This document shows, one piece after another, positions 488 to 14,994 of a DNA stretch of 64,000 nucleotides. Each line of letters begins with the position of its first letter. The stretch's first letter is position 1. The notes under the pieces are model-generated. The model searched no databases. It worked only from the letters and a program-made list of their open reading frames with translations, and was not told where the DNA came from. The stretch lies in sequence record ON190024.1; one strand, written 5' to 3'. A program made the translations under genes and the position numbers.

Positions 488-3400
488 TTAACTTAGTAGT
501 GCTTCTAGTCTAGCGATTCGTTCTTCAAGAGCTTCGCGTTTGCGCTTCTCTTCTTTAATACCCTCAATCAATAGACCAACCATATTTCCGTATGCAACTG
601 CATAGTGACCATCAGCATCGCCACCGGATTCAACAACAGCTTCTGGTAGAACTTCAAGAACTTCTTGAGCAATTACACCAGTTTGTCGCGGACATTCAAC
701 GTCTGTACGATCATATGTGTAACCATTCAGACGGTCAATTTTCTCAAGCGGATTTGTGATTCGCTCAACGTTAGTCTTGACTCGCGCATCCGAGTATGCT
801 GTAATATTACCAGCCGACTGAATGCTTTGATAGTAGTAGAAGCCGCTAGTCGCATCAGTTGAGTTGTGAAGCCAACTTGTGTTTCGATGACCAAAGTGCC
901 ACGTTTTACCATTATCAGAACGGAAAACCCAACTACCCTCATTTGAAGATCTCTGCATGTATCGTGTAGTATCGCCACCCAATGCAATGACGTTCTTAAC
1001 CATCAAGTTGCCGTTTGTCGTTAATGACATTGCCCCATCAGTCGCTGCGTCACTCGAATCACGCCACAAGAATCCACGATCCGTATCGTTGTTCATTGTG
1101 AACGTCATTGCGTAGTCATTCAACCAACCAAAGGATTGTGCGCTTGCCATGCCGATTGTATATGAACCACTAGACCACACTCGAATCTTATCATAAGAAG
1201 AAACACCAGTTGAGATCAATGTCCCATTGACTGTGAAGCTCCCATCAGAATGAGTATGATTGTGTGAATCATCCGCAACCGCAACAGATAATGCAACGTT
1301 TGCGCTACCGTCGATTGAAGCAGAACCACTTACATCGCCGTTCAGAGTCAGAGTACGAGCCGTAGTCCACTTATCTGCCAACGGGTGATAAGATGAGTTG
1401 TAGTTAGCACGCCATCCCGGTGCATAATTAGAACCATTATCAATGTAAATGAATTCTCGTCTAGTTGTCGCACCAGAAGCAGTTGTCGGTGTAATAACTT
1501 TGATTGTGCAGTTTGTTGTTGAAGTACCATGAACTTCAATCACAGAACCCGCAGTACCAAACACACCAAATCCCGTGTCTACTGTCACCTGAGCAGCATA
1601 TGACCAACTACCACGACATGTCCAGTACCAAGTTGAAAACGCGCCTTTTGCAGACAGCAATGAAATAAATTCAGCAGTCGTTACTCGATTATTTGTCCCA
1701 AATGAAATTTGACCTGCACCGTTAGTGCCTGTAACCTCTTGAGGAGACCATGATACGTTCGCTGTACCGTTTACAGACTTGCCAGTTTTCCCGATTGTCA
1801 ACGTTCTCGCAGTCGTCCACTTCGTCGCTTGTGTAGCTGAAGTCGCAGATGTTGCAGTCGTAGCGTTACCACTCAATGCCCCGATGAATGTCGGTGCTGT
1901 GATATTCACAGTCGATGTAATTGAAGTACTCTTAACTGAAAATTGTTTATTGTCAGCTAGTATACCACCGACGCCAAGAACAATCTCACCTGCCGTGTTT
2001 GAGTTGTGCAAATACACCGCAGTGCGGTTACCAATCAATCCAAATTTATCAACTTTAACCGTTTCAGATGCAGGAGCCGTATTGCCAGCAGAGTCAGTGA
2101 TGATCAATGATGAACTCATCGTATCACCAGTTTTCTGTACGTAGCCGCCGCCCGCAATAGGTGCGAATCTCGCGTCTGCTTCAGTCTCGGTGTAGTATCG
2201 ACCATCGTGCGTATGTGAGTCATTAGCAACCACAACAGACAAGGTAACGTTTGAGCTACCGTCGATTGAAGCAGAACCACTTACATCGCCGTTCAGAGTC
2301 AATGTTCTTGCAGTTGTCCACTTATCAGCCAATGGGTGATATTCATCATCGAAGATCTTCATCCACGCTGAACTAACACCAGACTCTCGACGCTTCCACC
2401 ATAGGCGATTACTATTCTGACCCATAGCAAGAGTCATTGCATAACCGTTACCGTTGTTGTGCTCAGTATGAACACCCCACATCCAACCAGTTTCTTCAGC
2501 AGGCTTACCCGTGATTGAGCTATTTACATCAATGAAACCGCTTCGTTGGTAATCATCAATGTCACCAGAAGATAGCTGCATCGAGCCGATTTTGCCGCCA
2601 GATGTTCCACCAAAACCGTAAACCACGTTACTTGACTGAGCTTGTGTAGTAGGTACATTCAAGTAACCAGTCATCGTATCGCCAGTCGCGTTTACGAAAC
2701 GAGCATCAGATTCTGCTTCGGTGTAGTAACGACCATCGTGAGTATGAGAGTCGTCAGCAACTGTAACTGCGAGTGAAATATTCGAGCTACCATCAAACGA
2801 AACTGATCCACTAACATCACCAGATAACGTCAACGTTCTTGCAGTTGTCCACTTATCAGCTTCTGGGTGGTAGTCGGTGTGGTACATATAAACCCAGTCT
2901 TCCCACACGTCTGCGTATCTCGTACGAAGTGCAATTGTACCTGAGTTGCCGCTTATACCATATGGGTAAGCAACTTGAGTCGCGTTAGTAGTCGAACCAT
3001 ATGTCATTGTCTGAGCATACCAGTAACCAGTAAACCCAGAAGGTCGATTTAAACCTTGTGATAACTTGTTGTAAAAGCCACCTCGATAAAGAGTATCCCA
3101 GTCAACTGTGGTATCAACACCCGATAGAGTACGCCCCGTCGCGATATATTCAGGGTTACTTGCGCTCAGACCAACTTCAGCGTATGTTGTATGATTTGGA
3201 ACAACTGTATTGATAGTGACGTTTGAACTACCGTCAATTGAAACTGAACCAGTTACTTCGCCTGATAGAGTAAGCGTTCTTGCAGTCGTCCATTTATCGG
3301 CATTTGGGTGATAGTTGTCTGCAAAAATTCGCTGCGTTGTGTTTAGATAACCAATACCGTTGATAACAACGTTGTTGTTTGATCTAGAACCGTACATGAC

Positions 3401-3772
3401 AACCGATTCAGAATTCGATTCACGTCTGATAATCTGCCATTGATTGACAACGCCATCATAGTGATAACGAACCCCGTGATTTCCGTTGTCCTCAGTCAAG
3501 TATAGACTTGCATCGGTGTTTGCAGTACTGCTCAAATGCAATTGCGCAGTCGATTTAGCGATTTGCAAATCGCCACTCATGACATCACCAGCACGTTTAA
3601 CAACAGACTCGGTTAAATCTGTATGAGGGTCTGGCTTGTCATTTTCTGTATAAAGTTTGTAGCCACTGTAAAGTACTGTTTCTCCTTGCGGATCGAAACG
3701 CAAATTACCGCCATGCCAAACTATGTTACCGCCAATCGCGGTTGTTGAACGTAATTCTGCCATTAGTTTCAT
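488..3772 (-). CDS. long tail fibre distal subunit (gp37-like) with C-terminal intramolecular chaperone (peptidase S74-like)
   Basis: Repeated HPxADKWTTARTLTLxGDVSGSxSxDGS modules. C-terminal YSDARVKTNVERI...GVIAQEV...VAYGNMVGLLIEGIKE plus coiled coil is typical of the autocleaving chaperone. Confidence 0.85.
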   Translation of the reverse strand: MKLMAELRSTTAIGGNIVWHGGNLRFDPQGETVLYSGYKLYTENDKPDPHTDLTESVVKRAGDVMSGDLQIAKSTAQLHLSSTANTDASLYLTEDNGNHGVRYHYDGVVNQWQIIRRESNSESVVMYGSRSNNNVVINGIGYLNTTQRIFADNYHPNADKWTTARTLTLSGEVTGSVSIDGSSNVTINTVVPNHTTYAEVGLSASNPEYIATGRTLSGVDTTVDWDTLYRGGFYNKLSQGLNRPSGFTGYWYAQTMTYGSTTNATQVAYPYGISGNSGTIALRTRYADVWEDWVYMYHTDYHPEADKWTTARTLTLSGDVSGSVSFDGSSNISLAVTVADDSHTHDGRYYTEAESDARFVNATGDTMTGYLNVPTTQAQSSNVVYGFGGTSGGKIGSMQLSSGDIDDYQRSGFIDVNSSITGKPAEETGWMWGVHTEHNNGNGYAMTLAMGQNSNRLWWKRRESGVSSAWMKIFDDEYHPLADKWTTARTLTLNGDVSGSASIDGSSNVTLSVVVANDSHTHDGRYYTETEADARFAPIAGGGYVQKTGDTMSSSLIITDSAGNTAPASETVKVDKFGLIGNRTAVYLHNSNTAGEIVLGVGGILADNKQFSVKSTSITSTVNITAPTFIGALSGNATTATSATSATQATKWTTARTLTIGKTGKSVNGTANVSWSPQEVTGTNGAGQISFGTNNRVTTAEFISLLSAKGAFSTWYWTCRGSWSYAAQVTVDTGFGVFGTAGSVIEVHGTSTTNCTIKVITPTTASGATTRREFIYIDNGSNYAPGWRANYNSSYHPLADKWTTARTLTLNGDVSGSASIDGSANVALSVAVADDSHNHTHSDGSFTVNGTLISTGVSSYDKIRVWSSGSYTIGMASAQSFGWLNDYAMTFTMNNDTDRGFLWRDSSDAATDGAMSLTTNGNLMVKNVIALGGDTTRYMQRSSNEGSWVFRSDNGKTWHFGHRNTSWLHNSTDATSGFYYYQSIQSAGNITAYSDARVKTNVERITNPLEKIDRLNGYTYDRTDVECPRQTGVIAQEVLEVLPEAVVESGGDADGHYAVAYGNMVGLLIEGIKEEKRKREALEERIARLEALLS

Positions 3773-3827
3773 TCCATTTATTGAAATTTTTCATATGACA
3801 GTATTTATTATGCCGTAAAAAAGGGCG

Positions 3828-4358
3828 CTATTTGCGCCCTTTACGATTTGCCTTATTTGCTTTTCTTTTTGCTCTACGCAACTCTTTGCGTTTTGCGATT
3901 TTGTCTGCACGTCTAACTGCATCATAATCCGCAGCACACGACGCAGCAAACGCATCAGGCTTGAAAACGGGTTCTTGACCCACGTATCCCAAGATAGTGC
4001 CCTTAGCTTCGTTATACGCAACGTGTGAACGATGGGATGGGTCTGGGTTGATGTCAACGTGAACTTCAAACCCACGAGTACCACACATTGGCTTAACACG
4101 CAGGGCGGTTTCACCTGCTTTATAGACTTCATTCATCAAACGACTACGAATACCATCTTTACAAGACATGTACGCTGGTTCAGTTTCGATAGATTTGAAT
4201 ACTTGAGCGCCTTTACTACCCTCAAGGTGAATGATGATTACAGTAGCGTAACTAATCATATCACTCTTACGCTTGCTATCACACCCAACATAAATCGTAC
4301 TGTTCGGATGACTGTTATTGATAGCTGTTTCAATTGCTTCCCAATCGAACATTTTCAC
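3828..4358 (-). CDS. RNase H-like nuclease (YkuK/DUF458-like)
   Basis: IYVGCDS, RLMNEV, VHVDIN and KPDAFAASCAAD motifs with conserved acidic residues; basic C-tail. Confidence 0.7.
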   Translation of the reverse strand: MKMFDWEAIETAINNSHPNSTIYVGCDSKRKSDMISYATVIIIHLEGSKGAQVFKSIETEPAYMSCKDGIRSRLMNEVYKAGETALRVKPMCGTRGFEVHVDINPDPSHRSHVAYNEAKGTILGYVGQEPVFKPDAFAASCAADYDAVRRADKIAKRKELRRAKRKANKANRKGRK

Positions 4359-4367
4359 CTCTGTACA

Positions 4368-4393
4368 AAAAAAGGCGGCACAATGCCGCCCCT
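4368..4393 (-). terminator. intrinsic terminator after DUF2828 gene
   Basis: Minus strand GGGGCGGC-attgt-GCCGCC followed by a T-run. Confidence 0.8.
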
Positions 4394-4403
4394 TATCACT
4401 TAT

Positions 4404-5840
4404 TTAAAAGCTGTAGCGATCAACGCCTACAGTTTTCAGCATGATCTTGACTGGCTCAAGCTCACCACCCAACAGTGAAGTCAGGATAGATGGGCTACAA
4501 CCCGATACCAGTGCAGTACCCGCTTCGCCAGCTTTAACCGGAACGTTGCCAAGACGACCACGAATGTTCCAGAAGACTAGTTGTGGCATTTCATAGCCAG
4601 CACGTGCGTACATAGCTTTGATTGCGTCGAAGTTTGCACGTTCGCCGCGACCGTACCAGCCACCACCAGTATTTGCTTGGTCGAATTCCATGTCGCTCAT
4701 GATAAGCAACTTAGTTGGCATTTCTTCTTGTGAAAGATTTGCACGTTTTGCACGTTCTAACAGAACGTTGAAGCACTTACCGATGTTTGTGCTCATGTCT
4801 TCGCCTGATCGATTCATGTTGTCAAGACGCTCTTTTAGTGAGCTACCGCGTAACTGGTGGAAGTGCGGATCGCTTGAGAACGAAATGAACTGATCTTTGA
4901 AGATGCCTTCATTGCGTTCAGCAACATAGATGCCAAGAGACATTGCAACTTGCTTACAAGTCACACCTGAACGATCTGTACCTGCGTTGATTGGCGTGCT
5001 CATAGAGCCAGACACGTCAACAACTGGGATGATGCGCTCATCAGAGCCTTCCATGTAGTTCGGCAGAGCCTTCCATTGCTCGTTCGCTACAGACGCATTA
5101 CCATGACTAACGCTCTTAACGACATCATATGGGAACAAGGCACCAGCGTTGATCTTCGCTTCACCTTTTTGAAGCGACTCGATGTAGCTTGTGTAACGAG
5201 CAGAAGCGTTACGACCGAATGCTTGTTGATAACGAGCCGACGCTACAGATGGCAACTTACCGAAGTCGATTGTATCCCATTCTTGCGCACACATCTTCTG
5301 TTCAACAGTGTCAGACAAAAGTGCTAGAATCTTACGCCACTGCTTCGCAGTTACGCCAAGAGACTTGATTGTGCGCTTGAACACATGACCGTTTTTGCTG
5401 TTCTCGCGTGGGAACCACTTCGCAGCGAGACTGTTCTTGTCGTTTACAATCGCATTTGACCACAATGTGATCGCGTCTTTTTCAAGACTTGTACCGAACG
5501 CAGAAATCAAGTCGTCGAAACGACCTAGTTCTGGAATTTTCGACATTACAGCACGAGCTACGTCAGGCTGCTCATTACAAAGCTTAGTGAATAGAGTACG
5601 GAAAGTACCACGTTCACCCGCACCACCGCGAACATCACGAGACCACAAAAGAATGCGTGTCGCTAGTTCTGGGTTTTCTGCAAACGCACGACCGAACAGT
5701 GTTTTAGACTGATCGTTACCACGCATAGCAGCAATACCGAAGAACAAGTTTAGACACTCGTTACCTGAAGTGCTGTGAGTAACTGCACCGTTTGCTGTAC
5801 GTGAATCGTTAGTGGTCATTGCGTTCATAAATGCTGACAT
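4404..5840 (-). CDS. DUF2828-family TROVE/Ro60-like protein with C-terminal vWA domain
   Basis: N-terminal NGAVTHSTSGNECLNLFF, WSRDVRGGAGER, GRFDDL and AAKWFPRE motifs. vWA MIDAS DVSGS plus MSDMEFD and VFWN. The Ro60/TROVE relationship is from family recall, not from a search. Confidence 0.75.
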   Translation of the reverse strand: MSAFMNAMTTNDSRTANGAVTHSTSGNECLNLFFGIAAMRGNDQSKTLFGRAFAENPELATRILLWSRDVRGGAGERGTFRTLFTKLCNEQPDVARAVMSKIPELGRFDDLISAFGTSLEKDAITLWSNAIVNDKNSLAAKWFPRENSKNGHVFKRTIKSLGVTAKQWRKILALLSDTVEQKMCAQEWDTIDFGKLPSVASARYQQAFGRNASARYTSYIESLQKGEAKINAGALFPYDVVKSVSHGNASVANEQWKALPNYMEGSDERIIPVVDVSGSMSTPINAGTDRSGVTCKQVAMSLGIYVAERNEGIFKDQFISFSSDPHFHQLRGSSLKERLDNMNRSGEDMSTNIGKCFNVLLERAKRANLSQEEMPTKLLIMSDMEFDQANTGGGWYGRGERANFDAIKAMYARAGYEMPQLVFWNIRGRLGNVPVKAGEAGTALVSGCSPSILTSLLGGELEPVKIMLKTVGVDRYSF

Positions 5841-5889
5841 TGTTTATTCCTCATATTAAATTGCTGTAAAATGTCGTTTCGATGTGATG

Positions 5890-5918
5890 ATTATACACGG
5901 ATTTGAACCCGTGTAAAC
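5890..5918 (-). promoter_or_regulatory. T4-early-type promoter of DUF2828 gene
   Basis: GTTTAC-17 nt-TATAAT on the minus strand; the spacer contains an inverted repeat. Confidence 0.85.
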
Positions 5919-5932
5919 ACTTTTTTCAATTT

Positions 5933-6247
5933 TTATCGAAAATTCATTCGAGTTAGATTCGTACCGTTTTCGTGAATCTCAACTAGCACGCGACCGCCCG
6001 TTTCATAAGACGTTCGGAGAGAACGATAACCATGCTCTTCGAAGAATGTACGAATAATAGTCGCACCACGCTTGTCTTTATCAGCAGCGTGAATGGGCAC
6101 TTTTACGATGATAGGGAAACTAGACCCCGACTCAACTGCGTGCATGAATTCTTTCTCACATTCGCTCGTGTAATGCTCGGTAAGAATTCGTTTTTCTTCT
6201 GCTTCACGAGCGTGAATTTGTTGTTTGAGTTCATTATGATTAATCAT
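5933..6247 (-). CDS. hypothetical protein
   Basis: 104-aa ORF with overlapping stop/start to its neighbour. Confidence 0.7.
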   Translation of the reverse strand: MINHNELKQQIHAREAEEKRILTEHYTSECEKEFMHAVESGSSFPIIVKVPIHAADKDKRGATIIRTFFEEHGYRSLRTSYETGGRVLVEIHENGTNLTRMNFR

Positions 6248-6579
6248 TGAAACCCCGCTTGTTTGTTTTCTCGAATTGTCAATTTGACAAAAGAATATGA
6301 GTAATCTCTCATATCACGCGGATCGCCAGAGTAATGCCCGAGCTGTGCGTCGAAGTTATGAAAACCCTCGCGTCGCATGACGCCTTTGATGAGAGACATC
6401 ATTTCATCACAACATTCATTGCGGTCAACATTCACCTGAATCGTGATTGGAAACTGAAACCCAGCAACGCCACCGATTTTACGTTCGATTGCTTTGCGCA
6501 TTTCAACTACGAAGAGTTCTTCACGAGTTGAGCGATTCTGTTTGACTTTTTGAATTAATGTATCGTATAAATTACCCAT
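6244..6579 (-). CDS. hypothetical protein
   Basis: Likely start MGNLYD at 6579, overlapping the upstream stop. Confidence 0.65.
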   Translation of the reverse strand: MGNLYDTLIQKVKQNRSTREELFVVEMRKAIERKIGGVAGFQFPITIQVNVDRNECCDEMMSLIKGVMRREGFHNFDAQLGHYSGDPRDMRDYSYSFVKLTIRENKQAGFQ

Positions 6580-6946
6580 CAATATATTCCTTAATCGGCT
6601 TAGAAAAGTGACGAATACAAGAACTGTCAAGTCGTTTACGACCATCACCATCTATATCAGGTAGTGTGTATTCGTCATTAAACGGCTGACCGCTTTCTTT
6701 CGCAATCTCATAGGCATCGGCTCGATTGAAGTATTCACCACAATAGTTGATAAACCCCTGACCGCGATCCCCGAGTTCGTTTCGATGTTCATATGTACAA
6801 CCTAGTTCTTTCAATAACTTAAAGACTGATTGCATGTTTCGACCGAAATGGCAGCTATCAGCAACAACAATGTCGCGCACTTCACCGTTCGGTAGTGTCA
6901 CTCGAATTGCATTAGCAGCAGACGATATTACATTGACGTGCGACAT
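6572..6946 (-). CDS. conserved phage hypothetical protein
   Basis: QGFINYCGEYFNRADAYEIAKESGQ resembles a common phage family of unknown function. Confidence 0.65.
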   Translation of the reverse strand: MSHVNVISSAANAIRVTLPNGEVRDIVVADSCHFGRNMQSVFKLLKELGCTYEHRNELGDRGQGFINYCGEYFNRADAYEIAKESGQPFNDEYTLPDIDGDGRKRLDSSCIRHFSKPIKEYIDG

Positions 6947-7284
6947 GTATCGTACCTCATAAAAATTGAACCGACGCGCTTATACTGACCAGAGTGAGAA
7001 AGCAACAGAGCCATTTTACTATGACCAACGGGATTGCTTGTCACTAGAACAACAGTGCGCGGAAAATTACGATGATCAATCGCATGAGAGAGAATATCAT
7101 ACCCCTCTCTACCAACATCATCACCTAGGTCATTATCCATGAATAGAGTGATGTCAGTTAGATTTGTGTGCTTGACGAAATTCATACCGTCTTCGAATGT
7201 TCGAATTACGAGTTTTTCATCATCACGTACGTAATCAGACGTGAACTTATCAATGTCGCGCTGATCATCAATCATGACGTGCAT
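6928..7284 (-). CDS. cyclic-phosphate-processing receiver-like domain protein (cREC-like)
   Basis: IDDQR ... MDNDLG ... GYDIL ... TSNPVG pattern of the stand-alone divergent receiver family linked to RNA repair. Confidence 0.7.
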   Translation of the reverse strand: MHVMIDDQRDIDKFTSDYVRDDEKLVIRTFEDGMNFVKHTNLTDITLFMDNDLGDDVGREGYDILSHAIDHRNFPRTVVLVTSNPVGHSKMALLLSHSGQYKRVGSIFMRYDTCRTSM

Positions 7285-7316
7285 AATATTTCTCTTTCGT
7301 TAGTGTTGATAAATAC

Positions 7317-7345
7317 ATCATACAGGTTCAACAAACGGAAGTCAA
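7317..7345 (-). promoter_or_regulatory. sigma70-type early promoter for the 7284->5933 operon
   Basis: TTGACT-17 nt-TATGAT on the minus strand. Confidence 0.75.
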
Positions 7346-7346
7346 C

Positions 7347-7718
7347 ATGAAAGACGAAAAAATTATTTCTTTTGATGAATACCTAAACGAAGGGTGGTTT
7401 GAAAGGCAATGGGCTAGATATAAGGCAGGTGAAGATGCACGCAGCATAAAGAAACTAGCTAAGATGCATACCAAGCTTCTACACATCGAACAGAAAGCAA
7501 AGCAAAACAAATACCGATACGAAGCCGTACGGTTCAACTACGAACACATCAAAATGAATGTGCTCGATGCCAAGAAGCTAATTAACAAGCTGCGATACAA
7601 GAAAGGGATTAGTCAAGAGCTAGTTCAGGCAATGGATAAACTAGACATTGAACTTGATAGACTCAACGACTTTGCCGTTGAGGGATTGCATGAGCTAATG
7701 ATTCAACATAAGCTATAA
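7347..7718 (+). CDS. hypothetical late protein, possible internal head protein
   Basis: TAAATA late-type promoter upstream, N-terminus MKDEKIISFDEYLNE, followed by a terminator. Confidence 0.65.
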   Translation: MKDEKIISFDEYLNEGWFERQWARYKAGEDARSIKKLAKMHTKLLHIEQKAKQNKYRYEAVRFNYEHIKMNVLDAKKLINKLRYKKGISQELVQAMDKLDIELDRLNDFAVEGLHELMIQHKL

Positions 7719-7721
7719 AAG

Positions 7722-7748
7722 AAAAGCCCCGTTTTGGGGCTTTTTTTG
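7722..7748. terminator. bidirectional intrinsic terminator
   Basis: AAAAGCCCC-gtttt-GGGGCTTTTTTTT between convergent genes. Confidence 0.8.
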
Positions 7749-7749
7749 T

Positions 7750-7962
7750 TTAATGTGAGTGGCGTAACTTCTTTTCGATCATTCGATCTACAATCGTGGA
7801 GTACATAAGATGCTCTTTGTAGTATTTCTCATCAACTCGGTTGCACTGGAATTGTCGAAAATCTTTGCGTAAGCGGGCAATGAATTTATTAAGTGCTTTG
7901 CGCACTTTGCAAACTTCAGACAGTTCCATGCTTTTTAGTGTATCTTCAGAAAGTATTTCCAT
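7750..7962 (-). CDS. hypothetical protein
   Basis: 70-aa ORF with GAGG SD. Confidence 0.6.
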   Translation of the reverse strand: MEILSEDTLKSMELSEVCKVRKALNKFIARLRKDFRQFQCNRVDEKYYKEHLMYSTIVDRMIEKKLRHSH

Positions 7963-9483: not shown

Positions 9484-9572
9484 TGGCGGAGATACTGGGA
9501 ATCGAACCCAGAGAACGCTATTAACGTCCGACACCTTAGCAGGGTGCTGTCATACCTTTAGACCATATCTCC
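9484..9572 (-). tRNA. tRNA-Ser(GCT)
   Basis: Cloverleaf with long variable arm, loop CTGCTAA, encoded CCA. Confidence 0.95.
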
Positions 9573-9577
9573 GTAGA

Positions 9578-9757
9578 TCATTTCTTACCACGCTCTGCTT
9601 TGCTAATCTCGACAGCAGCGATTTGCGCGTTGGCTTCTTTCTCAGTGTCATGAGTACCAAGTACTCGACCTTTAGATGAAAGAGCAACCCATTTGTCGCC
9701 ACGCTTCTCGACTTTCTCAACAAGCTTGTGGTATTCATCAAAAGTTTTAAGTTTCAT
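9578..9757 (-). CDS. 59-aa late protein, possible internal head protein
   Basis: Manual translation MKLKTFDEYHKLVEKVEKRGDKWVALSSKGRVLGTHDTEKEANAQIAAVEISKAERGKK; perfect TATAAATA at 9783-9790. Confidence 0.7.
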   Translation of the reverse strand: MKLKTFDEYHKLVEKVEKRGDKWVALSSKGRVLGTHDTEKEANAQIAAVEISKAERGKK

Positions 9758-9782
9758 TTGTCATCCCTCAGTTAGTTTATTG

Positions 9783-9790
9783 TATTTATA
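9783..9790 (-). promoter_or_regulatory. T4 late promoter TATAAATA
   Basis: Exact consensus upstream of 9757. Confidence 0.8.
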
Positions 9791-10013
9791 ACTGAACGAC
9801 TTTTAAACAGTGGCATGCTGCTCTCATGCTCAGACACATATTTGCTCTTATTGCAGGCGTGTGCCACGCGCAGCGCAGATCCCTTTTGATAATTTAATGA
9901 CCAGCGGGACTCTTAGCAGGTCTTACACATAGCCTTTCAGCTATATCTTCTTTTAAGACCATAGTGTCGTACGGTCTAATCACTCTCTTTCGATTCGCGT
10001 TGCTAAGTGAATT

Positions 10014-10090
10014 TGGTGCCCAACCCGAGATTCGAACTCGGATCATCTAGTGTTTGAAACTAGCGCCTCTGCCAATTGGACTAGTTGGGC
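10014..10090 (-). tRNA. tRNA-Leu(CAA)
   Basis: Cloverleaf, loop TTCAAAC, CCA. Confidence 0.92.
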
Positions 10091-10205
10091 TTGAATGAGC
10101 TGCCGCAACTCTTTAATCCCTAACGCCTGTCAGCTTTCGCCCGGCTGAGACCGTTTTCAACGGCGGTAGTCTAGCTTCGTGTAGAACGCGGCTTATGCTA
10201 GAGTT

Positions 10206-10282
10206 TGGTACGCACGGGCGGATTCGAACCGCCATCCCTGAGATTTTAAGCCTCATGCCTCTGCCAATTGGACCACGTGCGC
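10206..10282 (-). tRNA. tRNA-Leu(TAA)
   Basis: Cloverleaf, loop CTTAAAA, CCA. Confidence 0.92.
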
Positions 10283-10284
10283 AG

Positions 10285-10358
10285 TGGAGCCCGAACAGAG
10301 AATCGAACTCTGACCGCGGGATTTGCAATCCCTCATACTTCCATTATACGATTCGGGC
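10285..10358 (-). tRNA. tRNA-Cys(GCA)
   Basis: Cloverleaf, loop TTGCAAA, U73-CCA. Confidence 0.92.
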
Positions 10359-10461
10359 AATATGTTAGTGCATTGCATGAGCTACTGGCGATCTTAATGG
10401 GTATTTCAAGCATTCAGAATTCCCATGCGCTACTACAATGCTTTTTTCGCTAAATGCACTT

Positions 10462-10539
10462 TGGGGTGACAGACGGGGATCGAACCCGCATCTTCCGGAA
10501 TCACAACCCGGGGGTATTTCCACTTCACCCACTGCCACA
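10462..10539 (-). tRNA. tRNA-His(GTG)
   Basis: Cloverleaf, loop TTGTGAT, C73; the genomic -1 base reads T rather than G. Confidence 0.88.
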
Positions 10540-10592
10540 CCAAAGTACACTTTGGGATGTTTACGACATCAAACGAATGCGCTCCCTGTGCA

Positions 10593-10832
10593 TTAATCAG
10601 TTTTCTTTAAGTAGATACTATCAGGCGATAGCTCTCTCGTAAACATATTTTTGAAATAAATTTCGATGTCATCAGAAGTTGTTGAAGACTCAATTTCAAG
10701 AGCACGTTCTAAAATCTTACCGCGTTTATAACCAGCGCGCCAACAGTCAAACATAAGTCTGTCCATGCGTTTCAGTTTTTCAATTTGGTTTTGATTTACG
10801 TATTCGTGAGTTTCAAGTAATACAGGCGTCAT
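10593..10832 (-). CDS. hypothetical protein
   Basis: 79-aa ORF between tRNAs. Confidence 0.6.
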   Translation of the reverse strand: MTPVLLETHEYVNQNQIEKLKRMDRLMFDCWRAGYKRGKILERALEIESSTTSDDIEIYFKNMFTRELSPDSIYLKKTD

Positions 10833-10855
10833 AATTTATTTCTCATCATAAAGAA

Positions 10856-10929
10856 TGGTAGTCCCTAGTGGAATCGAGCCACTTCTTTCTCTGTGTAAAA
10901 GAGACGTACTGCCATTATACTAAGGGACC
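10856..10929 (-). tRNA. tRNA-Val(TAC)
   Basis: Cloverleaf, loop TTTACAC, T-loop CTCGATT, CCA. Confidence 0.9.
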
Positions 10930-10934
10930 AAAAT

Positions 10935-11008
10935 TGGAGCGGGTACACGGACTCGAACCGAGACGAACGACTTGGAAGGACGTCATGCTACCATTACATC
11001 ATACCCGC
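10935..11008 (-). tRNA. tRNA-Gly(TCC)
   Basis: Loop CTTCCAA, single mismatches in the anticodon and T stems, CCA. Confidence 0.88.
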
Positions 11009-11012
11009 ATTG

Positions 11013-11207
11013 TTAATCTGAAGCGTCGAACAAATCACGTATTGCACGCAGATTCGTAAGCTCTACAGTAAGTGTTCTTATAAAGAACGGGTTGGTCTCT
11101 TTCGCGAGACGATTTTCAACACAGCGAATCTTATCGCGTATGTTGCCCTTGCTTAGTGTAAAGTAGTCATGCTTCTTATCCTCTTTGCTTGAATTTGGTG
11201 GAGACAC
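11013..11207 (-). CDS. hypothetical protein (true start uncertain)
   Basis: Short ORF between tRNAs; the annotated start overlaps a tRNA. Confidence 0.45.
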   Translation of the reverse strand: MSPPNSSKEDKKHDYFTLSKGNIRDKIRCVENRLAKETNPFFIRTLTVELTNLRAIRDLFDASD

Positions 11208-11271
11208 CGATACTCGAAATCGGATCTAATGGCTTATGAGACCATTGCTCTACCACTTGAGCTACATCTCC
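11196..11271 (-). tRNA. tRNA-CAT (probably elongator Met)
   Basis: Cloverleaf, loop CTCATAA, CCA. Confidence 0.9.
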
Positions 11272-11501
11272 AAAAGTAGTAATTAACTCATTTAATCGCA
11301 CACGGGCTGACACCATATATTCATGGTCTGAGCGAGGAACCACATAGTGGGTACTATTACCTCATCTTAGTTTTGATTGTTTTACATGACGATAACTAGA
11401 AACGTTCATAATAATGCCACGCGATACTTCCTGTATCACGGCTAACTGAGTTAGCATAAAGTGCCTTTCGGCTGTAGTGTCGTTTCCGACGAATTAAGTA
11501 C

Positions 11502-11715
11502 AGACAATACCGAAGTGTTTTTTCGTCTTTAACATGAATCGGAGTTGACTATCTTGTTGCTTCTCAACAAGCAAATATCGTCTGTTTCAGCGACGCGCCT
11601 ATCTGACTATTTCTAGGCAGAGAGAATCTTTCCTTTCAAGCTGCACCGAAGCACTGCCCAGGTTAAGATCATTACCATTTTTAGTAAGATTTTAATTTGT
11701 TGCTGTATATTGTCT
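11502..11715 (-). ncRNA. candidate ncRNA B2 (214 nt, end-paired, CAGCAA motif)
   Basis: Terminal helix AGACAATA/TATTGTCT; paralog of 9227-9472. Confidence 0.65.
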
Positions 11716-11776
11716 CTCAAACCATGCTCGTGATATGCCGAAGCAAGTATCATTCGCCGCATGATAGAGCTTAATC

Positions 11777-11852
11777 TGGCATCCCCAGAGGGATTCGAAC
11801 CCACAACCCACGACTTAGAAGGTCGTTGCTCTTCCAATTGAGCTATGAGGAC
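11777..11852 (-). tRNA. tRNA-Arg(TCT)
   Basis: Cloverleaf, loop CTTCTAA, CCA. Confidence 0.93.
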
Positions 11853-11929
11853 GTTGAAAAGAATTCGATCCATGAGCTATTGCGTAGAAGATGGTAGTAA
11901 AGAGACTCTACACTCATGTGATCGAAATT

Positions 11930-12004
11930 TGGTGGACACGCAGGGAGTCGAACCCTATCTTCCTCATTGCAAGTGAGGCGCTTTCCCAATTAAGCTAACG
12001 GCCC
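11930..12004 (-). tRNA. tRNA-Ala(TGC), irregular acceptor stem
   Basis: Loop CTTGCAA and G3:U70 present; the acceptor needs a bulge to pair. Confidence 0.8.
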
Positions 12005-12011
12005 ATAATTA

Positions 12012-12221
12012 TTACAACTGTGTGATTGAAATATGATCCCAGCCGTATAGACCTTCAAGCTCTTCAATCGGCTCACCAACAATATCAGAAATATATTCAG
12101 CAACTTTTGCTTCAATTTCTTCATCAGATAGTTTTTCATCAACGGAAAAAGCATCTTCGTTATTGTTGCCACCGAAATAGCCACCAATGTCATATTCACA
12201 CCATATTGAAATATAGTTCAT
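12012..12221 (-). CDS. small acidic hypothetical protein
   Basis: Start MNYISIWCEY with GAGA SD. Confidence 0.65.
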   Translation of the reverse strand: MNYISIWCEYDIGGYFGGNNNEDAFSVDEKLSDEEIEAKVAEYISDIVGEPIEELEGLYGWDHISITQL

Positions 12222-12246
12222 GTTATTCTCACAGTTGTTTAGAAAA

Positions 12247-12322
12247 TGGTGCCCTGACACGGATTTGAACCGCGAACCTGCTCATTACAAGTGAGCTGCA
12301 CTGCCAGTTGTGCTATCAGGGC
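12247..12322 (-). tRNA. tRNA-Thr(TGT)
   Basis: Cloverleaf, loop CTTGTAA, CCA. Confidence 0.95.
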
Positions 12323-12360
12323 GTTACTGAGTGTTATTACTTGCGTCGTCCAGACCAGAG

Positions 12361-12449
12361 ATACCAACTCTGAAAGGGAATCGAACCCCAAACATTTCTT
12401 TTCGTAAGAAGAATATTAGTAATTGTTTGCTGAAAACACTCTTCGGTAT
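12361..12449 (-). ncRNA. candidate small RNA: motif hairpin plus T-arm
   Basis: GAAGAGT-GTTTTCAGCAAAC...-ATTCTTC hairpin, then GGGG-TTCGATT-CCCT; ATACC/GGTAT closing. Confidence 0.55.
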
Positions 12450-12450
12450 T

Positions 12451-12524
12451 TGGCAGGGGATAACGGATTCGAACCGGTACTGCGTGAGTCAAAGTCACGT
12501 ATGCTGCCTTTACATCAATCCCCT
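12451..12524 (-). tRNA. tRNA-Gln(TTG)
   Basis: Cloverleaf, loop CTTTGAC, G73-CCA. Confidence 0.92.
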
Positions 12525-12543
12525 ATTATTCTTAAATTATCTT

Positions 12544-12619
12544 TGGCGGAACCGACGGGTTTCGAACCCGCTACCTTCTCCGTGACAGGGAGACATGCAA
12601 CCACTTACACCTCGGCTCC
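12544..12619 (-). tRNA. tRNA-Asp(GTC)
   Basis: Cloverleaf, loop CTGTCAC, CCA. Confidence 0.95.
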
Positions 12620-12842
12620 CCAAAGACAACTTAATAGTTGCTTTGTGCTCGTGCAAACCAAACACTAGCTGAACGACTTCTTGATTTCTTAGTTTTACTA
12701 CACATTCCCTCGCTAAAGGGCATCATCGTTCTTGTTTTTAACAAATGCTATGAAAGTGAGATCTTGCTATGCAGGAGGTTTCAAATCTCTGCACACAAGC
12801 AGACATCGCAACCAACGCTCTCAAACATTGTCATGGTCAAAC

Positions 12843-12917
12843 TGGCGCTCCGTGTAGGACTCGAACCTACAGCCTTTCGGTTAACAGCCGATTGCTCCAC
12901 CATTGAGCTAACGAAGC
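12843..12917 (-). tRNA. tRNA-Asn(GTT)
   Basis: Cloverleaf, loop CTGTTAA, CCA. Confidence 0.95.
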
Positions 12918-12920
12918 GTA

Positions 12921-13298
12921 TTATTTATTCGATGCGTGTTCTTCTCTGTGGCAATTCGCACATAACATGATGCATTTATCAAGCTCTGGGACAATTCTCT
13001 CCCATCGTTTGCAACCGCCACTAGCAATGCCAAAGTCTTTCCCATTCGGGTCTGTATGATGAAACTCTAATGCTTCAATGCACTTATCATACCCACATCG
13101 TTCACAGCAACCACCTTTATATTCAACCGCCCTCAATTTAGTACGGCGTCTATATGATACCACTGCTTCTTTATTCTTTTGTTTTCTCTCGTCATCTGTT
13201 CGAAATTTCAATTTCTTACCGTTGTATAAACCAGCACATCGACGACTACAGAATTTATTGTTGTGTGTTTCTGCACCACACTCTAAGCATTTATTCAT
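12921..13298 (-). CDS. small HNH endonuclease
   Basis: CxxC/CxxxC zinc motifs; CERCGY...LEFHH...KCIMLCANCHREEH. Confidence 0.8.
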   Translation of the reverse strand: MNKCLECGAETHNNKFCSRRCAGLYNGKKLKFRTDDERKQKNKEAVVSYRRRTKLRAVEYKGGCCERCGYDKCIEALEFHHTDPNGKDFGIASGGCKRWERIVPELDKCIMLCANCHREEHASNK

Positions 13299-13439
13299 CT
13301 GAATTACTCAATTAATAGTTAATAAAGTAACCCAAAGGAGAGTATAGCCCGCCACATTCGTAAGTGAATGACTCTATTACTACTTAGCAATTACATTCAA
13401 GCGTTACCAAGAACCATGCCACGTAGCTTTAAATTAAAC

Positions 13440-13497
13440 AGCAATCCTTTTCTCTTTTTCCAAATAAAAGTTTTGTATTGTTTGCTGAAAGATTGCT
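13440..13497 (-). ncRNA. candidate 58-nt end-paired RNA with CAGCAA motif
   Basis: AGCAATC-TTTCAGCAAAC...AAAAG-GATTGCT. Confidence 0.55.
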
Positions 13498-13503
13498 TAA
13501 TTC

Positions 13504-13577
13504 TGGCAGGGACATAGAGATTCGAACTCTAACGAACGGGTTTGGAATCCGTCATGCTGCCGTTACATCATGTCCCT
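13504..13577 (-). tRNA. tRNA-Trp(CCA)
   Basis: Cloverleaf, loop TTCCAAA, G73-CCA. Confidence 0.92.
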
Positions 13578-13583
13578 AAAATT

Positions 13584-13657
13584 TGGTAGCCCCAGACAGA
13601 CTCGAACTGTCAACGTGCGATTATCGGTCGCGTGTTTTACCGTTAAACTATGGAGCT
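13584..13657 (-). tRNA. tRNA-Ile(GAT)
   Basis: Cloverleaf, loop CCGATAA, CCA. Confidence 0.9.
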
Positions 13658-13721
13658 AAAGTGAGCACATTTCAGTGCTCGTGTTAATCGGTTAAGTGAC
13701 TAAACTTCCCGGTTAACTAAT

Positions 13722-13820
13722 TGGCGGAAGACTAGGGATTCGAACCCTAACATCACCTCCCGGTGACCGACGGTTTTCAAGACCGTTGCCGCTACCCAGA
13801 ATCTTTCGGCTAAGCCTTCC
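13722..13820 (-). tRNA. tRNA-Ser(TGA), enlarged D loop
   Basis: Loop CTTGAAA, long variable arm, CCA. Confidence 0.9.
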
Positions 13821-13827
13821 ATTAATT

Positions 13828-13904
13828 TGGTTGCGTGGGGCTGGATTCGAACCAGCGTTCTCCGGCTTATGAGACCGACGAGATGACCACTTCTCTACCC
13901 CGCA
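13828..13904 (-). tRNA. tRNA-Met(CAT), initiator-like
   Basis: Resembles bacterial tRNA-fMet body (GCGGGG...CCCC-CGCAACCA); loop CTCATAA. Confidence 0.88.
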
Positions 13905-13913
13905 ATTATTCAA

Positions 13914-14001
13914 CAGCTTGCGTTCTTTGGTCTGTTTATCGCTGTCTGAACTGAGTTCGCCGAGCGATCAATAGATTAAGTTAAATTGCAGTATGCAAGC
14001 T
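13914..14001 (-). ncRNA. candidate end-paired RNA with CTGCAA motif variant
   Basis: AGCTTGC-ATACTGCAAT...ATCGCT/AGCGAT hairpin...AAAGAAC-GCAAGCT. Confidence 0.5.
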
Positions 14002-14006
14002 AAATT

Positions 14007-14092
14007 TGGTGGAGCGTAGAGGAATCGAACCTCTCTTCCCATTACGGGACACGGATTTACAGTCCGCTGCGCCACCTTGGCGCATACGCTCC
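14007..14092 (-). tRNA. tRNA-Tyr(GTA)
   Basis: Loop CTGTAAA, variable arm, CCA. Confidence 0.92.
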
Positions 14093-14098
14093 GGAATT

Positions 14099-14172
14099 TG
14101 GTACTCGATACGGGAGTCGAACCCGTCCTACTTCCTTGAAAGGGAAGTGACCTACCGATAGTCGAATCGAGC
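14099..14172 (-). tRNA. tRNA-Glu(TTC)
   Basis: Cloverleaf, loop CTTTCAA, CCA. Confidence 0.92.
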
Positions 14173-14235
14173 ATTAAATTGTATATTGATTTGCAAGCTA
14201 ATCAACTCGCAAAGCGATACACAATGTATCTAATT

Positions 14236-14312
14236 TGGTACGCCGCCCTGGACTCGAACCAGACACCTGAGAGTTAAAAGCTCCCTGCTCTTCCATGATG
14301 AGCTACCGACGC
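14236..14312 (-). tRNA. tRNA-Lys(TTT) copy 1
   Basis: Loop CTTTTAA, CCA. Confidence 0.9.
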
Positions 14313-14323
14313 ATTATAAAATC

Positions 14324-14398
14324 TGGTGGGTCGCATGAGATTCGAACTCACACCGGTCTGGTTAAAAGCCAGATGTACTACCGTTATACGAACGACCC
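14324..14398 (-). tRNA. tRNA-Lys(TTT) copy 2
   Basis: Loop CTTTTAA, CCA; body unrelated to copy 1. Confidence 0.92.
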
Positions 14399-14404
14399 AG
14401 AATG

Positions 14405-14479
14405 TGGTGCACCCCCTCGGAATCGAACCGAGCACTGCGGGACTTCAATCCGCCGCTTTTCCTGATAAGCTAAGGGTGC
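14405..14479 (-). tRNA. tRNA-Phe(GAA)
   Basis: Loop TTGAAGT, CCA. Confidence 0.88.
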
Positions 14480-14480
14480 A

Positions 14481-14557
14481 TGGTACGCATGAAGAGATTC
14501 GAACTCTTATCATTCGGCTTCTAAGACCGACGCCTCTGCCAATTGGGCTACATGCGC
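14481..14557 (-). tRNA. tRNA-Leu(TAG)
   Basis: Loop CTTAGAA, CCA. Confidence 0.92.
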
Positions 14558-14584
14558 ATTAAATTTTGTAAACTTCTTTTCTTC

Positions 14585-14614
14585 ATTGTACATGATGTTT
14601 ATATCGTTGTAAAC
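14585..14614 (-). promoter_or_regulatory. early-type promoter inside the tRNA cluster
   Basis: GTTTAC(A)...TACAAT with upstream A-tract; GATGTTTA/TAAACATC inverted repeat overlaps it. Confidence 0.7.
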
Positions 14615-14779
14615 ATCTTTTTTTGAATTTATTTTGAAGAACTTAACGTTTTCATTTTTCTATGTGTTAATCTTAACACTCGATCAAGACATCTTAAACA
14701 CTAATTTGTGAAAAAGTTCGTTAAATTCTATCATCACGACAGTACTTAACGAGATACGGTCCTAAGCGTATCAAATCAA

Positions 14780-14907: not shown

Positions 14908-14910
14908 ATA

Positions 14911-14986: not shown

Positions 14987-14994
14987 ATTAAAAC

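What the first reader, a model, noticed from the sequence alone, without database searches (positions are those of the whole stretch)
3828..7284. RNA-repair-like gene cassette: cREC-like receiver + Ro60-like + RNase H-like nuclease
Co-oriented early genes encode a cyclic-phosphate-processing receiver-like protein (6928-7284), the TROVE/vWA protein, and directly downstream a YkuK-like RNase H-fold nuclease. Established knowledge: Ro60 and cREC domains occur in RNA-repair contexts, and Rsr/Y RNA partners with a nuclease (PNPase). Inference: these genes, the CCA-adding enzyme and the RNA family form a module that processes 2',3'-cyclic-phosphate ends left by host anticodon nucleases.
Basis: partly seen in the sequence, partly recalled or inferred. 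Interest (0 to 1): 0.7.

Follow-up and report, generated by a model that had tools for sequence, protein, structure and literature searches.

The report
Phage Ro60-like, nuclease, cREC gene set
A KVP40-type Vibrio phage carries, just after its tRNA genes, three intact genes for a Ro60-shaped RNA-binding ring, an RNase H-type nuclease and a cyclic-phosphate esterase; relatives keep them linked, which points to a phage tool for handling tRNA ends, but its activity is untested.

Summary
All three domain calls pass profile searches at the stated coordinates: cREC (PF20274), DUF2828+DUF7788 and YkuK/DUF458 (PF04308). A model of the middle protein matches Ro60 structures over its full length. Predicted catalytic and metal-binding residues are conserved.

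Linkage is real but lineage-limited.
- The trio cREC, Ro60-like, DUF458 recurs in two further relatives, at another genome position.
- Ro60-like and DUF458 lie within 5 kb of each other in 10 of the 11 phage lineages I found that carry both. That includes Cronobacter S13 and Pseudomonas Milchi.
- Most phages with one of these genes lack the other.
- Outside this clade cREC lies 6-125 kb from the Ro60-like gene.

New here: phage DUF458 is a tRNA-array gene. In 77 of 80 viral loci it sits beside co-oriented tRNAs, at a median of 11 nt. A small metallophosphoesterase recurs nearby, and in S13 the CCA-adding enzyme follows it directly.

The cassette holds no ligase. KVP40's Rnl1, PNK-type kinase, Rnl2 and CCA-adding enzyme lie 56-115 kb away. 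I therefore favour tRNA or tRNA-like RNA surveillance and 3'-end trimming and healing over re-ligation of anticodon-nuclease cuts.

The scan's earlier notes on this genome propose Y-RNA-like partners; I checked them only lightly.

The parts
6928..7284 (-). cREC (cyclic-phosphate processing receiver) protein, 118 aa, stand-alone; KVP40.0304
   Evidence: PF20274 at E 2.9e-15, 57.1 bits against a cut-off of 27. phrog_1479. Invariant D6, D7, D50-N51-D52 and T82/S83-N84-P85 across 12 homologues.
7317..7345 (-). sigma-70-like promoter candidate (TTGACT-17-TATGAT) 33 nt upstream of the cREC start
   Evidence: sequence. It is a consensus match only, and such sites are not enriched over shuffles.
6572..6946 (-). 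T4 Arn.3 / Y16D-like protein, 124 aa, function unknown; overlaps the cREC stop by 19 nt; KVP40.0303
   Evidence: phrog_839 at 5.4e-32. Atlas neighbours are PF26092 T4_Y16D clusters, feature score 0.91, structural TM 0.67. KVP40 note 'similar to T4 arn.3'.
6244..6651 (-). small protein of unknown function (ORF 135 aa; KVP40.0302 is annotated at 112 aa)
   Evidence: phrog_15681 at 1e-69 on residues 25-135. No Pfam or NCBIfam match.
5933..6247 (-). small protein of unknown function, 104 aa; KVP40.0301; overlaps the previous gene by 4 nt
   Evidence: phrog_15675 at 2.5e-57. No Pfam match. Atlas gives only unnamed viral clusters.
5890..5917 (-). sigma-70-like promoter candidate (TTTACA-16-TATAAT, 11 of 12) before the Ro60-like gene; a T-arm-like hairpin fills its spacer
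   Evidence: The leader 5841-5889 holds an ACAGCAA copy at 5861-5867.
4404..5840 (-). Ro60-like ring protein (helical-repeat ring plus vWA domain with MIDAS motif), 478 aa; KVP40.0300
   Evidence: PF25043 at 1.2e-45 plus PF11443 at 1e-29. AlphaFold model pLDDT 77.5. The top three Foldseek PDB matches are Ro60 of Thermus phage phiLo, Xenopus and human, E 9e-7 to 3e-5, TM 0.51-0.58 over the full length. Invariant D275-V-S277-G-S279, T351 and D383.
4367..4392 (-). G+C-rich hairpin plus T7 run between the Ro60-like stop and the DUF458 start (attenuator or terminator candidate)
   Evidence: Read. Relatives change it with pairing kept (variants at 4373, 4377 and 4389).
3828..4358 (-). YkuK/DUF458 RNase H-fold nuclease, 176 aa (an ATG at 4352 behind GAGGTG is the likelier start), with a 30-residue Lys/Arg-rich C-terminal helix; KVP40.0299
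   Evidence: PF04308 at 5.9e-17. phrog_11311 at 1e-93. Invariant D27, E77, D102 and D144 in 38 sequences. Model pLDDT 92.5. Weak fold matches to NurA, EndoV and RNase HI. Tail composition.
3817..3839 (-). intrinsic-terminator-like hairpin (GGGCGC-AAATA-GCGCCC plus T6) overlapping the DUF458 stop, followed by a late-promoter-like AATAAATA before gp37
   Evidence: Read.

Best explanation
The cassette is a phage tool set for structured small RNAs, centred on tRNAs and tRNA-like RNAs.

Shown:
- Three intact proteins are encoded: an Ro60-fold ring, a DEDD RNase H-fold nuclease and a cREC phosphoesterase-type receiver domain.
- They lie on one strand just downstream of the 27-gene tRNA array.
- The Ro60-like and DUF458 genes are close together in 10 of the 11 lineages found that carry both.
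- Phage DUF458 genes sit inside or at the end of tRNA arrays.

Inferred:
- The ring binds tRNA-like RNAs and the single-stranded 3' ends of damaged or misfolded tRNAs, as Ro60 does.
- The DUF458 nuclease is the phage's own nuclease partner. It trims or degrades those RNAs, taking the place that host PNPase holds in the Ro60/Y RNA/PNPase machine.
- cREC, together with a small metallophosphoesterase in relatives, opens and removes 2',3'-cyclic or 3'-phosphate ends. Such ends would otherwise block exonucleases and the CCA-adding enzyme.
- With no ligase in the set, the likely outcome is 3'-end trimming and healing followed by CCA repair, or disposal of the RNA. Re-ligation of anticodon loops is unlikely.
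For: Domains and residues:
- The domain calls and conserved catalytic or metal-binding residues hold.
- The Ro60 fold is confirmed.

The trio in relatives:
- cREC, Ro60-like and DUF458 are directly consecutive in L088/L089. In L173 two small ORFs intervene.
- Both sit next to gp46/47/45 rather than gp37, so the set is kept through a rearrangement.

The Ro60-like/DUF458 pair:
- It is adjacent in L090, in EniLVp02, in P0138 and L165 (opposite order), and within 3-4.3 kb in G027, G034, Cronobacter S13 and Pseudomonas Milchi.
- On the Ro60-like tree this proximity needs at least 3-4 changes.
- Of 11 lineages with both genes, 10 have them within 5 kb, in genomes of 170-465 kb.

tRNA link:
- 77 of 80 viral DUF458 loci hold tRNAs. 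The nearest is a median 11 nt away and always on the same strand.
- The same holds in unrelated phages RcXuper and BUDD.
- It does not hold for chromosomal bacterial homologues.

Other neighbours:
- A phrog_547 phosphoesterase recurs beside the set.
- A CCA-adding enzyme directly follows DUF458 in S13.
- 26 of 27 window tRNAs encode CCA, so the phage's CCA enzyme can only serve repair.

Precedent: phage Ro60 binds phage Y-like RNAs and host PNPase (PMC12135203).
Against: - No biochemical data exist for any of the three families in phages.
- Complex prediction for Ro60-like plus DUF458 gave no answer.
- 45 of 48 contigs with the Ro60-like gene lack DUF458, and 22 of 24 larger DUF458 contigs lack the Ro60-like gene. 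Neither protein needs the other.
- cREC is tightly linked only in the KVP40-related clade.
- T4-like phages pile accessory genes around tRNA arrays, which inflates chance proximity.
- The 80 DUF458 loci fall into few sequence clusters: 6 at 70% identity.
- A terminator-like hairpin separates the Ro60-like and DUF458 genes.
Confidence: 0.45

Rival explanations
1. The three genes are independent passengers. Each is a separate accessory gene that happens to lie in the plastic region beside the tRNA array. DUF458 is a pre-tRNA maturation or turnover nuclease for the phage's own tRNA transcripts. The Ro60-like protein works alone with its RNAs. cREC serves NAD/ADP-ribose or nucleotide metabolism.
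For: - Most phages carry only one of the three.
- cREC is 6-125 kb from the Ro60-like gene outside this clade.
- DUF458 is bound far more tightly to tRNA arrays than to the Ro60-like gene.
- Separate promoter-like and terminator-like sites divide the cassette.
- Three unrelated small genes interrupt it in KVP40.
Against: - When both genes are present they are close in 10 of 11 lineages, in both gene orders.
- The trio stays together at a different genome position.
- In the triad clade outside KVP40, DUF458 has left the tRNA array but stays with the Ro60-like gene.
Confidence: 0.3
2. One reading: the cassette, the CCA-adding enzyme and the tRNA-like RNAs together repair tRNAs cut in the anticodon loop by host nucleases (PrrC/RloC type), by processing the 2',3'-cyclic-phosphate ends.
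For: - cREC is predicted to open cyclic phosphates and is linked to RNA ligases in other phages (PMC7824862, PMC9503650).
- Phosphoesterases recur next to the set.
- The phage is rich in tRNA genes.
Against: - The cassette holds no ligase.
- KVP40's Rnl1 and a PNK-type kinase ORF sit together about 115 kb away. That pair is the T4-type healing and sealing set.
- Rnl2 is about 90 kb and the CCA enzyme about 56 kb away.
- A nuclease has no role in loop re-ligation.
Confidence: 0.1
3. Counter-defence by sequestration and signal destruction. The Ro60-like RNP binds and damps a host RNase such as PNPase, as in Thermus phage phiLo. cREC destroys cyclic-nucleotide or cyclic ADP-ribose defence signals, as the nearby Acb1 does for CBASS. 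DUF458 degrades host RNAs.
For: - phiLo Ro60 with its Yrl RNAs attenuates host PNPase (PMC12135203).
- The authors who defined cREC first proposed cADPr or 2'-3' cyclic nucleotides as substrates.
- An Acb1 gene lies 11.6 kb upstream on the same strand.
Against: - cREC's recurrent neighbours here are RNA-related, not NAD-related.
- The tRNA-array position of DUF458 argues for a tRNA substrate.
- There is no evidence of PNPase binding for this divergent family.
Confidence: 0.15

Closest known systems
Ro60 / Y RNA / PNPase machine (RYPER) of Deinococcus and Salmonella; Ro60 (TROVE, PF05731)
   Same: Ring of helical repeats closed by a vWA domain with a MIDAS motif. The gene lies beside tRNA-like RNA genes and is genetically linked to a nuclease.
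   Different: There is no sequence-level match to PF05731 or to any Ro60 chain in the PDB; the likeness is by fold only, with 12-16% identity. The linked nuclease is a phage-encoded RNase H-fold protein, not host PNPase. No Y RNA binding is shown.
phiRo60 of Thermus phage phiLo (PDB 9l5y; PMC12135203)
   Same: It is a phage-encoded Ro60-fold protein and the best structural match (E 8.8e-07). It has phage-encoded Y-like RNA partners.
   Different: phiLo Ro60 is described by its authors as an Ro60 homolog, and it acts on host PNPase. In a term search of that paper I found no mention of a neighbouring nuclease or cREC. The KVP40 protein belongs to the much larger DUF2828/DUF7788 family, with more than 7,000 clusters.
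cREC-containing RNA-repair and NAD/ADPr systems of jumbo and medium phages (Iyer et al. 2021, 2022; PMC7824862, PMC9503650)
   Same: Stand-alone cREC with the conserved aspartates. A phosphoesterase neighbour occurs in relatives (L173, L175).
   Different: The published contexts that I read link cREC to RNA ligases, Nudix, sirtuin, 2H, kinase and calcineurin-like enzymes. In those passages I found no link to a Ro60-like gene or to DUF458. No ligase is present here.
YkuK / DUF458 (PF04308), predicted RNase H-like (Knizewski and Ginalski 2005; Majorek et al. 2014, PMC3985635)
   Same: HMM match, DEDD residues and a single-domain protein.
   Different: The family has no known function or solved structure. 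The phage branch is embedded in tRNA arrays. The KVP40/S13 branch adds a 20-35 residue Lys/Arg tail.
T4 Pnkp-Rnl1 tRNA healing and sealing pathway
   Same: It is a phage answer to tRNA damage that involves 2',3'-cyclic phosphate ends.
   Different: That pathway needs a kinase-phosphatase and a ligase. KVP40 has candidates for both elsewhere, and this cassette has neither.

Membership tests
cREC (PF20274) | Profile match above the curated cut-off | tested here: met
   57.1 bits against a cut-off of 27, E 2.9e-15, profile positions 1-86 of 88.
cREC (PF20274) | Receiver-type acidic pocket: paired Asp after strand 1 and Asp after strand 3 | tested here: met
   D6, D7, D50 and D52 are invariant in 12 homologues down to 39% identity.
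cREC (PF20274) | Hydrolysis of 2',3'-cyclic phosphate or cyclic ADPr-phosphate | not testable with these tools
   The family is described as experimentally uncharacterised in PMC9503650.
Ro60 / TROVE | Sequence membership in Pfam TROVE (PF05731) or similarity to solved Ro60 chains | tested here: not met
   PF05731 was not listed at E up to 0.1. A profile search of PDB sequences gave no Ro60 hit.
Ro60 / TROVE | Helical-repeat ring closed by a vWA domain | tested here: met
   The top three Foldseek hits are Ro60 proteins: probability 1.00, TM 0.51-0.58, 515-565 aligned columns.
Ro60 / TROVE | MIDAS metal site in the vWA domain | tested here: met
   D275-x-S277-x-S279, T351 and D383 are invariant in 20 sequences.
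Ro60 / TROVE | Bound Y RNA partner | tested here: inconclusive
   Rfam's tRNA model hits two oversized tRNA-like genes of 113-117 nt at 15785-15897 and 17451-17567. ACAGCAA occurs in the gene's leader and in the tRNA cluster.
YkuK / DUF458 (PF04308) | Profile match above the curated cut-off | tested here: met
   62.4 bits against a cut-off of 25, profile positions 6-142 of 145.
YkuK / DUF458 (PF04308) | RNase H-type carboxylate set (D, E, D, D) | tested here: met
   D27, E77, D102 and D144 are invariant in 38 sequences down to 30% identity.
YkuK / DUF458 (PF04308) | RNase H-like fold | tested here: inconclusive
   The model is confident (pLDDT 92.5). PDB matches to NurA, EndoV and RNase HI are weak: E 1e-3 to 4e-2, TM 0.26-0.37. 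Atlas neighbours at TM 0.5-0.58 are RNase H and NurA.
Healing-and-sealing RNA repair cassette (Pnkp-Rnl or RtcB type) | An RNA ligase encoded in the cassette | tested here: not met
   No ligase domain occurs in 3828-7962. The PF09511 and PF09414 hits lie about 115 and 90 kb away in KVP40.
Conserved three-gene module | cREC, Ro60-like and DUF458 linked in relatives outside the genus | tested here: met
   L088/L089 and L173 carry the trio. This is confined to one clade: it is absent from 78 other Ro60-like loci.

The most novel reading that the evidence does not exclude
A self-contained, ligase-independent tRNA 3'-end rescue machine encoded by phages. The Ro60-like ring, loaded with phage tRNA-mimic RNAs, captures tRNAs whose acceptor ends were cut or extended by host toxins. 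The tRNA-array nuclease DUF458 trims them. cREC and a metallophosphoesterase clear the cyclic or 3'-phosphate. The phage CCA-adding enzyme then rebuilds the end. DUF458 would be the first dedicated nuclease partner of an Ro60-type RNP other than PNPase.
Probability: 0.22. Interest if true: 0.82.

Novelty: new variant of a known kind. Interest (0 to 1): 0.6.

Why it matters
Ro60 RNPs are known from animals, bacteria and, since 2025, one phage. The DUF2828/DUF7788 branch is far more abundant in viral metagenomes and has never been studied.

A recurrent link to an uncharacterised RNase H-fold nuclease would assign a first function to both families. That nuclease marks phage tRNA arrays across unrelated phages, and end-healing esterases and a CCA-adding enzyme lie nearby.

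The finding would also open a testable route by which tRNA-rich phages maintain or police tRNA pools under host attack. The proteins are small, soluble-looking and easy to assay, and KVP40 is a culturable model phage.

Tried and rejected
- Complex prediction for the Ro60-like protein plus DUF458 scored 0.00. The tool reads this as no answer, so it is not used as evidence.
- Public runs holding the region exist only as low-depth contigs of unknown kind. They show no transcript ends and no timing.
- Profile searches of PDB sequences with the Ro60-like and DUF458 alignments found nothing useful.
- Single-sequence word-index searches badly undercounted the DUF458 and cREC relatives: 22 and 15 hits. 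Pattern scans then found more than 550 viral DUF458 loci. This corrected an early impression that DUF458 is nearly always next to the Ro60-like gene.
- The neighbours of cREC in 12 other phages are heterogeneous. Only a 3'-5' exoribonuclease-like gene in three loci stood out.
- No homologue of the recurrent phosphoesterase occurs in the 64-kb window.
- NCBIfam gave nothing.
- Burroughs and Aravind 2016 (PMC5062991) could not be read.
- The three small genes between cREC and the Ro60-like gene stayed unexplained.
- The overlapping ORFs 3791-4132 (-) and 4032-4478 (+) are taken as spurious.


Full report
**What the window is.** The window is a KVP40-type Vibrio phage (Straboviridae, Schizotequatrovirus). 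Region 3700-7400 is 100% identical to phage PVA8 and 98.4% to KVP40. The finding corresponds to KVP40.0299-0304. All genes lie on the minus strand. Upstream in the direction of transcription are 27 tRNA genes at 9484-17066. Rfam's tRNA model also hits two oversized tRNA-like genes there. Downstream is the long tail fibre gene gp37.

- cREC, 6928-7284: PF20274, E 2.9e-15.
- Ro60-like, 4404-5840: DUF7788 at 1.2e-45 plus DUF2828 at 1e-29. PHROGs names the family 'RNA-binding protein'.
- DUF458, 3828-4358: PF04308 RNaseH_like at 5.9e-17.
- Three small genes of unknown function lie between cREC and the Ro60-like gene. One is like T4 Arn.3/Y16D. With cREC they form a chain of overlapping reading frames (overlaps of 19, 11 and 4 nt in the KVP40 annotation).
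- A sigma-70-like site precedes cREC, and a better one (11 of 12) precedes the Ro60-like gene. Such sites are not enriched over shuffled sequence, so 'early' remains a guess.
- A G+C hairpin with a T-run separates the Ro60-like and DUF458 genes. A second one ends the cassette just before a late-promoter-like box for gp37.

**The proteins look functional.**
- An AlphaFold model of the 478-aa protein (pLDDT 77.5) finds Ro60 proteins as its three best PDB matches over the whole length. These are Thermus phage phiLo (E 8.8e-07), Xenopus and human, with TM 0.51-0.58.
- Its vWA domain keeps the MIDAS residues D275-x-S-x-S, T351 and D383.
- By sequence it is not a TROVE member. PF05731 is not hit, and a profile search of PDB sequences finds no Ro60.
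- DUF458 keeps an invariant D27/E77/D102/D144 set in 38 sequences. Its model is confident (pLDDT 92.5).
- That model resembles NurA, EndoV and RNase HI only weakly. No relative has a solved structure.
- cREC keeps the receiver-type aspartates D6, D7, D50 and D52.

**Linkage starting from the Ro60-like gene.** The family is huge: more than 7,000 clusters at 90% identity.
- Of 80 viral loci, only the same-genus locus and one other had DUF458 within 8 kb by single-sequence search.
- With the Pfam model, 3 of 48 contigs held PF04308 at all. In all three it lay within 5 kb of the Ro60-like gene.
- cREC was present in 15 of 48 contigs, but 6-125 kb away (mostly 12-28 kb) except in the same genus.

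**Linkage starting from DUF458.**
- The closest relatives show cREC, Ro60-like and DUF458 directly consecutive in L088/L089. In L173 two small ORFs are added.
- L090 and Vibrio phage EniLVp02 have Ro60-like, a small ORF, then DUF458.
- All of these sit beside gp46/47/45 rather than gp37.
- More distant cases have the opposite order: DUF458 then Ro60-like, 296-813 nt apart, in P0138 and L165.
- Others are 3-4.3 kb apart: G027, G034, Cronobacter S13 and Pseudomonas Milchi. One case is 11.5 kb apart.
- On a tree of 87 Ro60-like proteins the 'DUF458 nearby' state needs 4 changes, of which at least 3 are forced by well-supported branches.
- Against this, 77 of 80 viral DUF458 loci have no Ro60-like gene within 8 kb, and 22 of 24 larger DUF458 contigs lack it altogether.

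The pairing is therefore facultative. When both genes are present it is strongly non-random.

**The strongest new regularity concerns tRNA arrays.**
- In 77 of 80 viral DUF458 loci there are tRNA genes. The nearest is a median 11 nt away and always on the same strand, and 56 of 80 lie within 500 nt. This holds for arrays of 1 to 29 tRNAs.
- These loci are not all independent: they form 6 clusters at 70% identity.
- The same picture appears in unrelated phages. In Rhodobacter phage RcXuper, DUF458 follows a peptidyl-tRNA hydrolase inside a 22-tRNA array. In Xanthomonas phage BUDD it sits inside 34 tRNAs.
- Bacterial chromosomal homologues in freshwater Burkholderiales and Methylophilaceae serve as a control and are not tRNA-adjacent.
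- In the triad clade outside KVP40, DUF458 has no tRNA nearby but keeps the Ro60-like neighbour.
- Ro60-like loci are more weakly tRNA-linked: 31 of 80 have tRNAs within 8 kb.
- The branches of DUF458 that sit near the Ro60-like gene mostly carry a 20-35 residue Lys/Arg tail. The tRNA-array branch lacks it. This is confounded by phylogeny.

**Further recurrent neighbours point to RNA 3'-end chemistry.**
- A phosphoesterase of about 180 aa (phrog_547; a weak Metallophos_2 match) sits directly before cREC in L173.
- It lies near the set in L088 and L090, and between the Ro60-like and DUF458 genes in G027 and S13. It also lies near DUF458 in six tRNA-array loci.
- It is absent from this window.
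- In S13, DUF458 is followed directly by the CCA-adding enzyme and an NMNAT/ADP-ribose pyrophosphatase.
- In KVP40 the CCA-adding enzyme is about 56 kb away, Rnl1 and a PNK-type kinase ORF about 115 kb away, and Rnl2 about 90 kb away.
- Because 26 of 27 tRNA genes here already encode CCA, the phage's CCA enzyme can only serve end repair.

**Interpretation.**
- What is shown: three intact genes, lineage-limited but real linkage, and a tRNA-array signature for the nuclease.
- The best-supported mechanism, at about 0.45, is a tRNA-centred surveillance and 3'-end processing set. The Ro60-like ring holds tRNA-like RNAs and 3' ends. DUF458 is its phage-encoded nuclease. cREC, with a metallophosphoesterase in relatives, clears cyclic or 3'-phosphates.
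The cassette has no ligase, and a separate Rnl1 and kinase pair exists elsewhere in the genome.
- Independent functions for the three genes (0.3) remain open.
- A counter-defence reading (0.15) also remains open. It rests on PNPase damping, as in phiLo (PMC12135203), together with cyclic-signal destruction by cREC.

**Comparison with the literature.**
- cREC and its predicted role come from Iyer et al. 2021 and 2022 (PMC7824862, PMC9503650). The 2021 paper also notes ROT/TROVE proteins in some jumbo phages.
- DUF458 was predicted to be RNase H-like in 2005 and was classified in 2014 (PMC3985635).
- A full-text search for DUF458, YkuK, PF04308, DUF2828 and PF11443 found no paper that treats the tRNA-array association or the link to Ro60-like genes.
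- I rate the finding a new variant of a known kind.

**Earlier notes of this scan.** They propose Y-RNA-like partners in the tRNA cluster and a shared ACAGCAA tag. I saw the oversized tRNA-like genes and the tag in the gene's leader. I did not test those claims further.

Noticed in passing
window 18873-19328 (-): The T4 57B homologue is an Acb1 anti-CBASS 2H phosphodiesterase (PF23474, 1.7e-46). The KVP40 RefSeq record names it 'RNA ligase', which looks like a mis-annotation.
   Followed up: partly
L201, L216, L225, L228, L231 (bacterial chromosomes, for example Ca. Methylopumilus universalis): Phage-type DUF458 genes (about 38-40% identity) sit in complete chromosomes of streamlined freshwater Methylophilaceae and Burkholderiales. 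They are not next to tRNAs and no Ro60-like or cREC gene is nearby. This is an odd distribution for a mostly viral branch.
   Followed up: partly
L178 (Cronobacter phage S13, 131558-141932): A single region of about 9 kb holds a Ro60-like gene, two oversized tRNA-like genes (121 and 113 nt), a phosphoesterase, tRNA-Ser, thymidine kinase, DUF458, a CCA-adding enzyme and an NMNAT/ADP-ribose pyrophosphatase.
   Followed up: partly
L181 (Rhodobacter phage RcXuper) and L182 (Xanthomonas phage BUDD): In RcXuper, DUF458 sits inside a 22-tRNA array directly after a peptidyl-tRNA hydrolase. In BUDD it sits inside 34 tRNAs, none of which the BUDD record annotates in this stretch.
   Followed up: partly
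window 5894-5915: A hairpin with a tRNA T-arm-like sequence (ACACGGGTTCAAATCCGTGT) fills the spacer between the -35 and -10 boxes of the promoter-like site before the Ro60-like gene.
   Followed up: no
window 15785-15897 and 17451-17567 (-): Rfam's tRNA model hits two genes of 113-117 nt that ARAGORN does not call. The KVP40 record calls such genes pseudo-tRNAs. Other notes of this scan read them as Y-RNA-like.
   Followed up: no
L088 3092-6047: Five tandem paralogous genes (185-203 aa, weakly phrog_622-like) lie directly upstream of cREC. The last one overlaps its start.
   Followed up: no
window 6941-7345, in run X2: A contig from a related phage matches the cassette except for two stretches of the cREC gene, which are replaced by unlike sequence of the same length. 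cREC appears to be a mosaic hot spot.
   Followed up: no
window 488-3772 (-): The gp37 long tail fibre ends in a Peptidase_S74 intramolecular chaperone domain (PF13884, 1.4e-15).
   Followed up: no
L082-L087 (marine T4-like contigs): Here DUF458 is followed by two tRNA-Ser genes. About 4 kb further on lie an RlaP nucleotidyltransferase (PF10127, an RNA-ligase-associated family) and an HD-domain protein.
   Followed up: no
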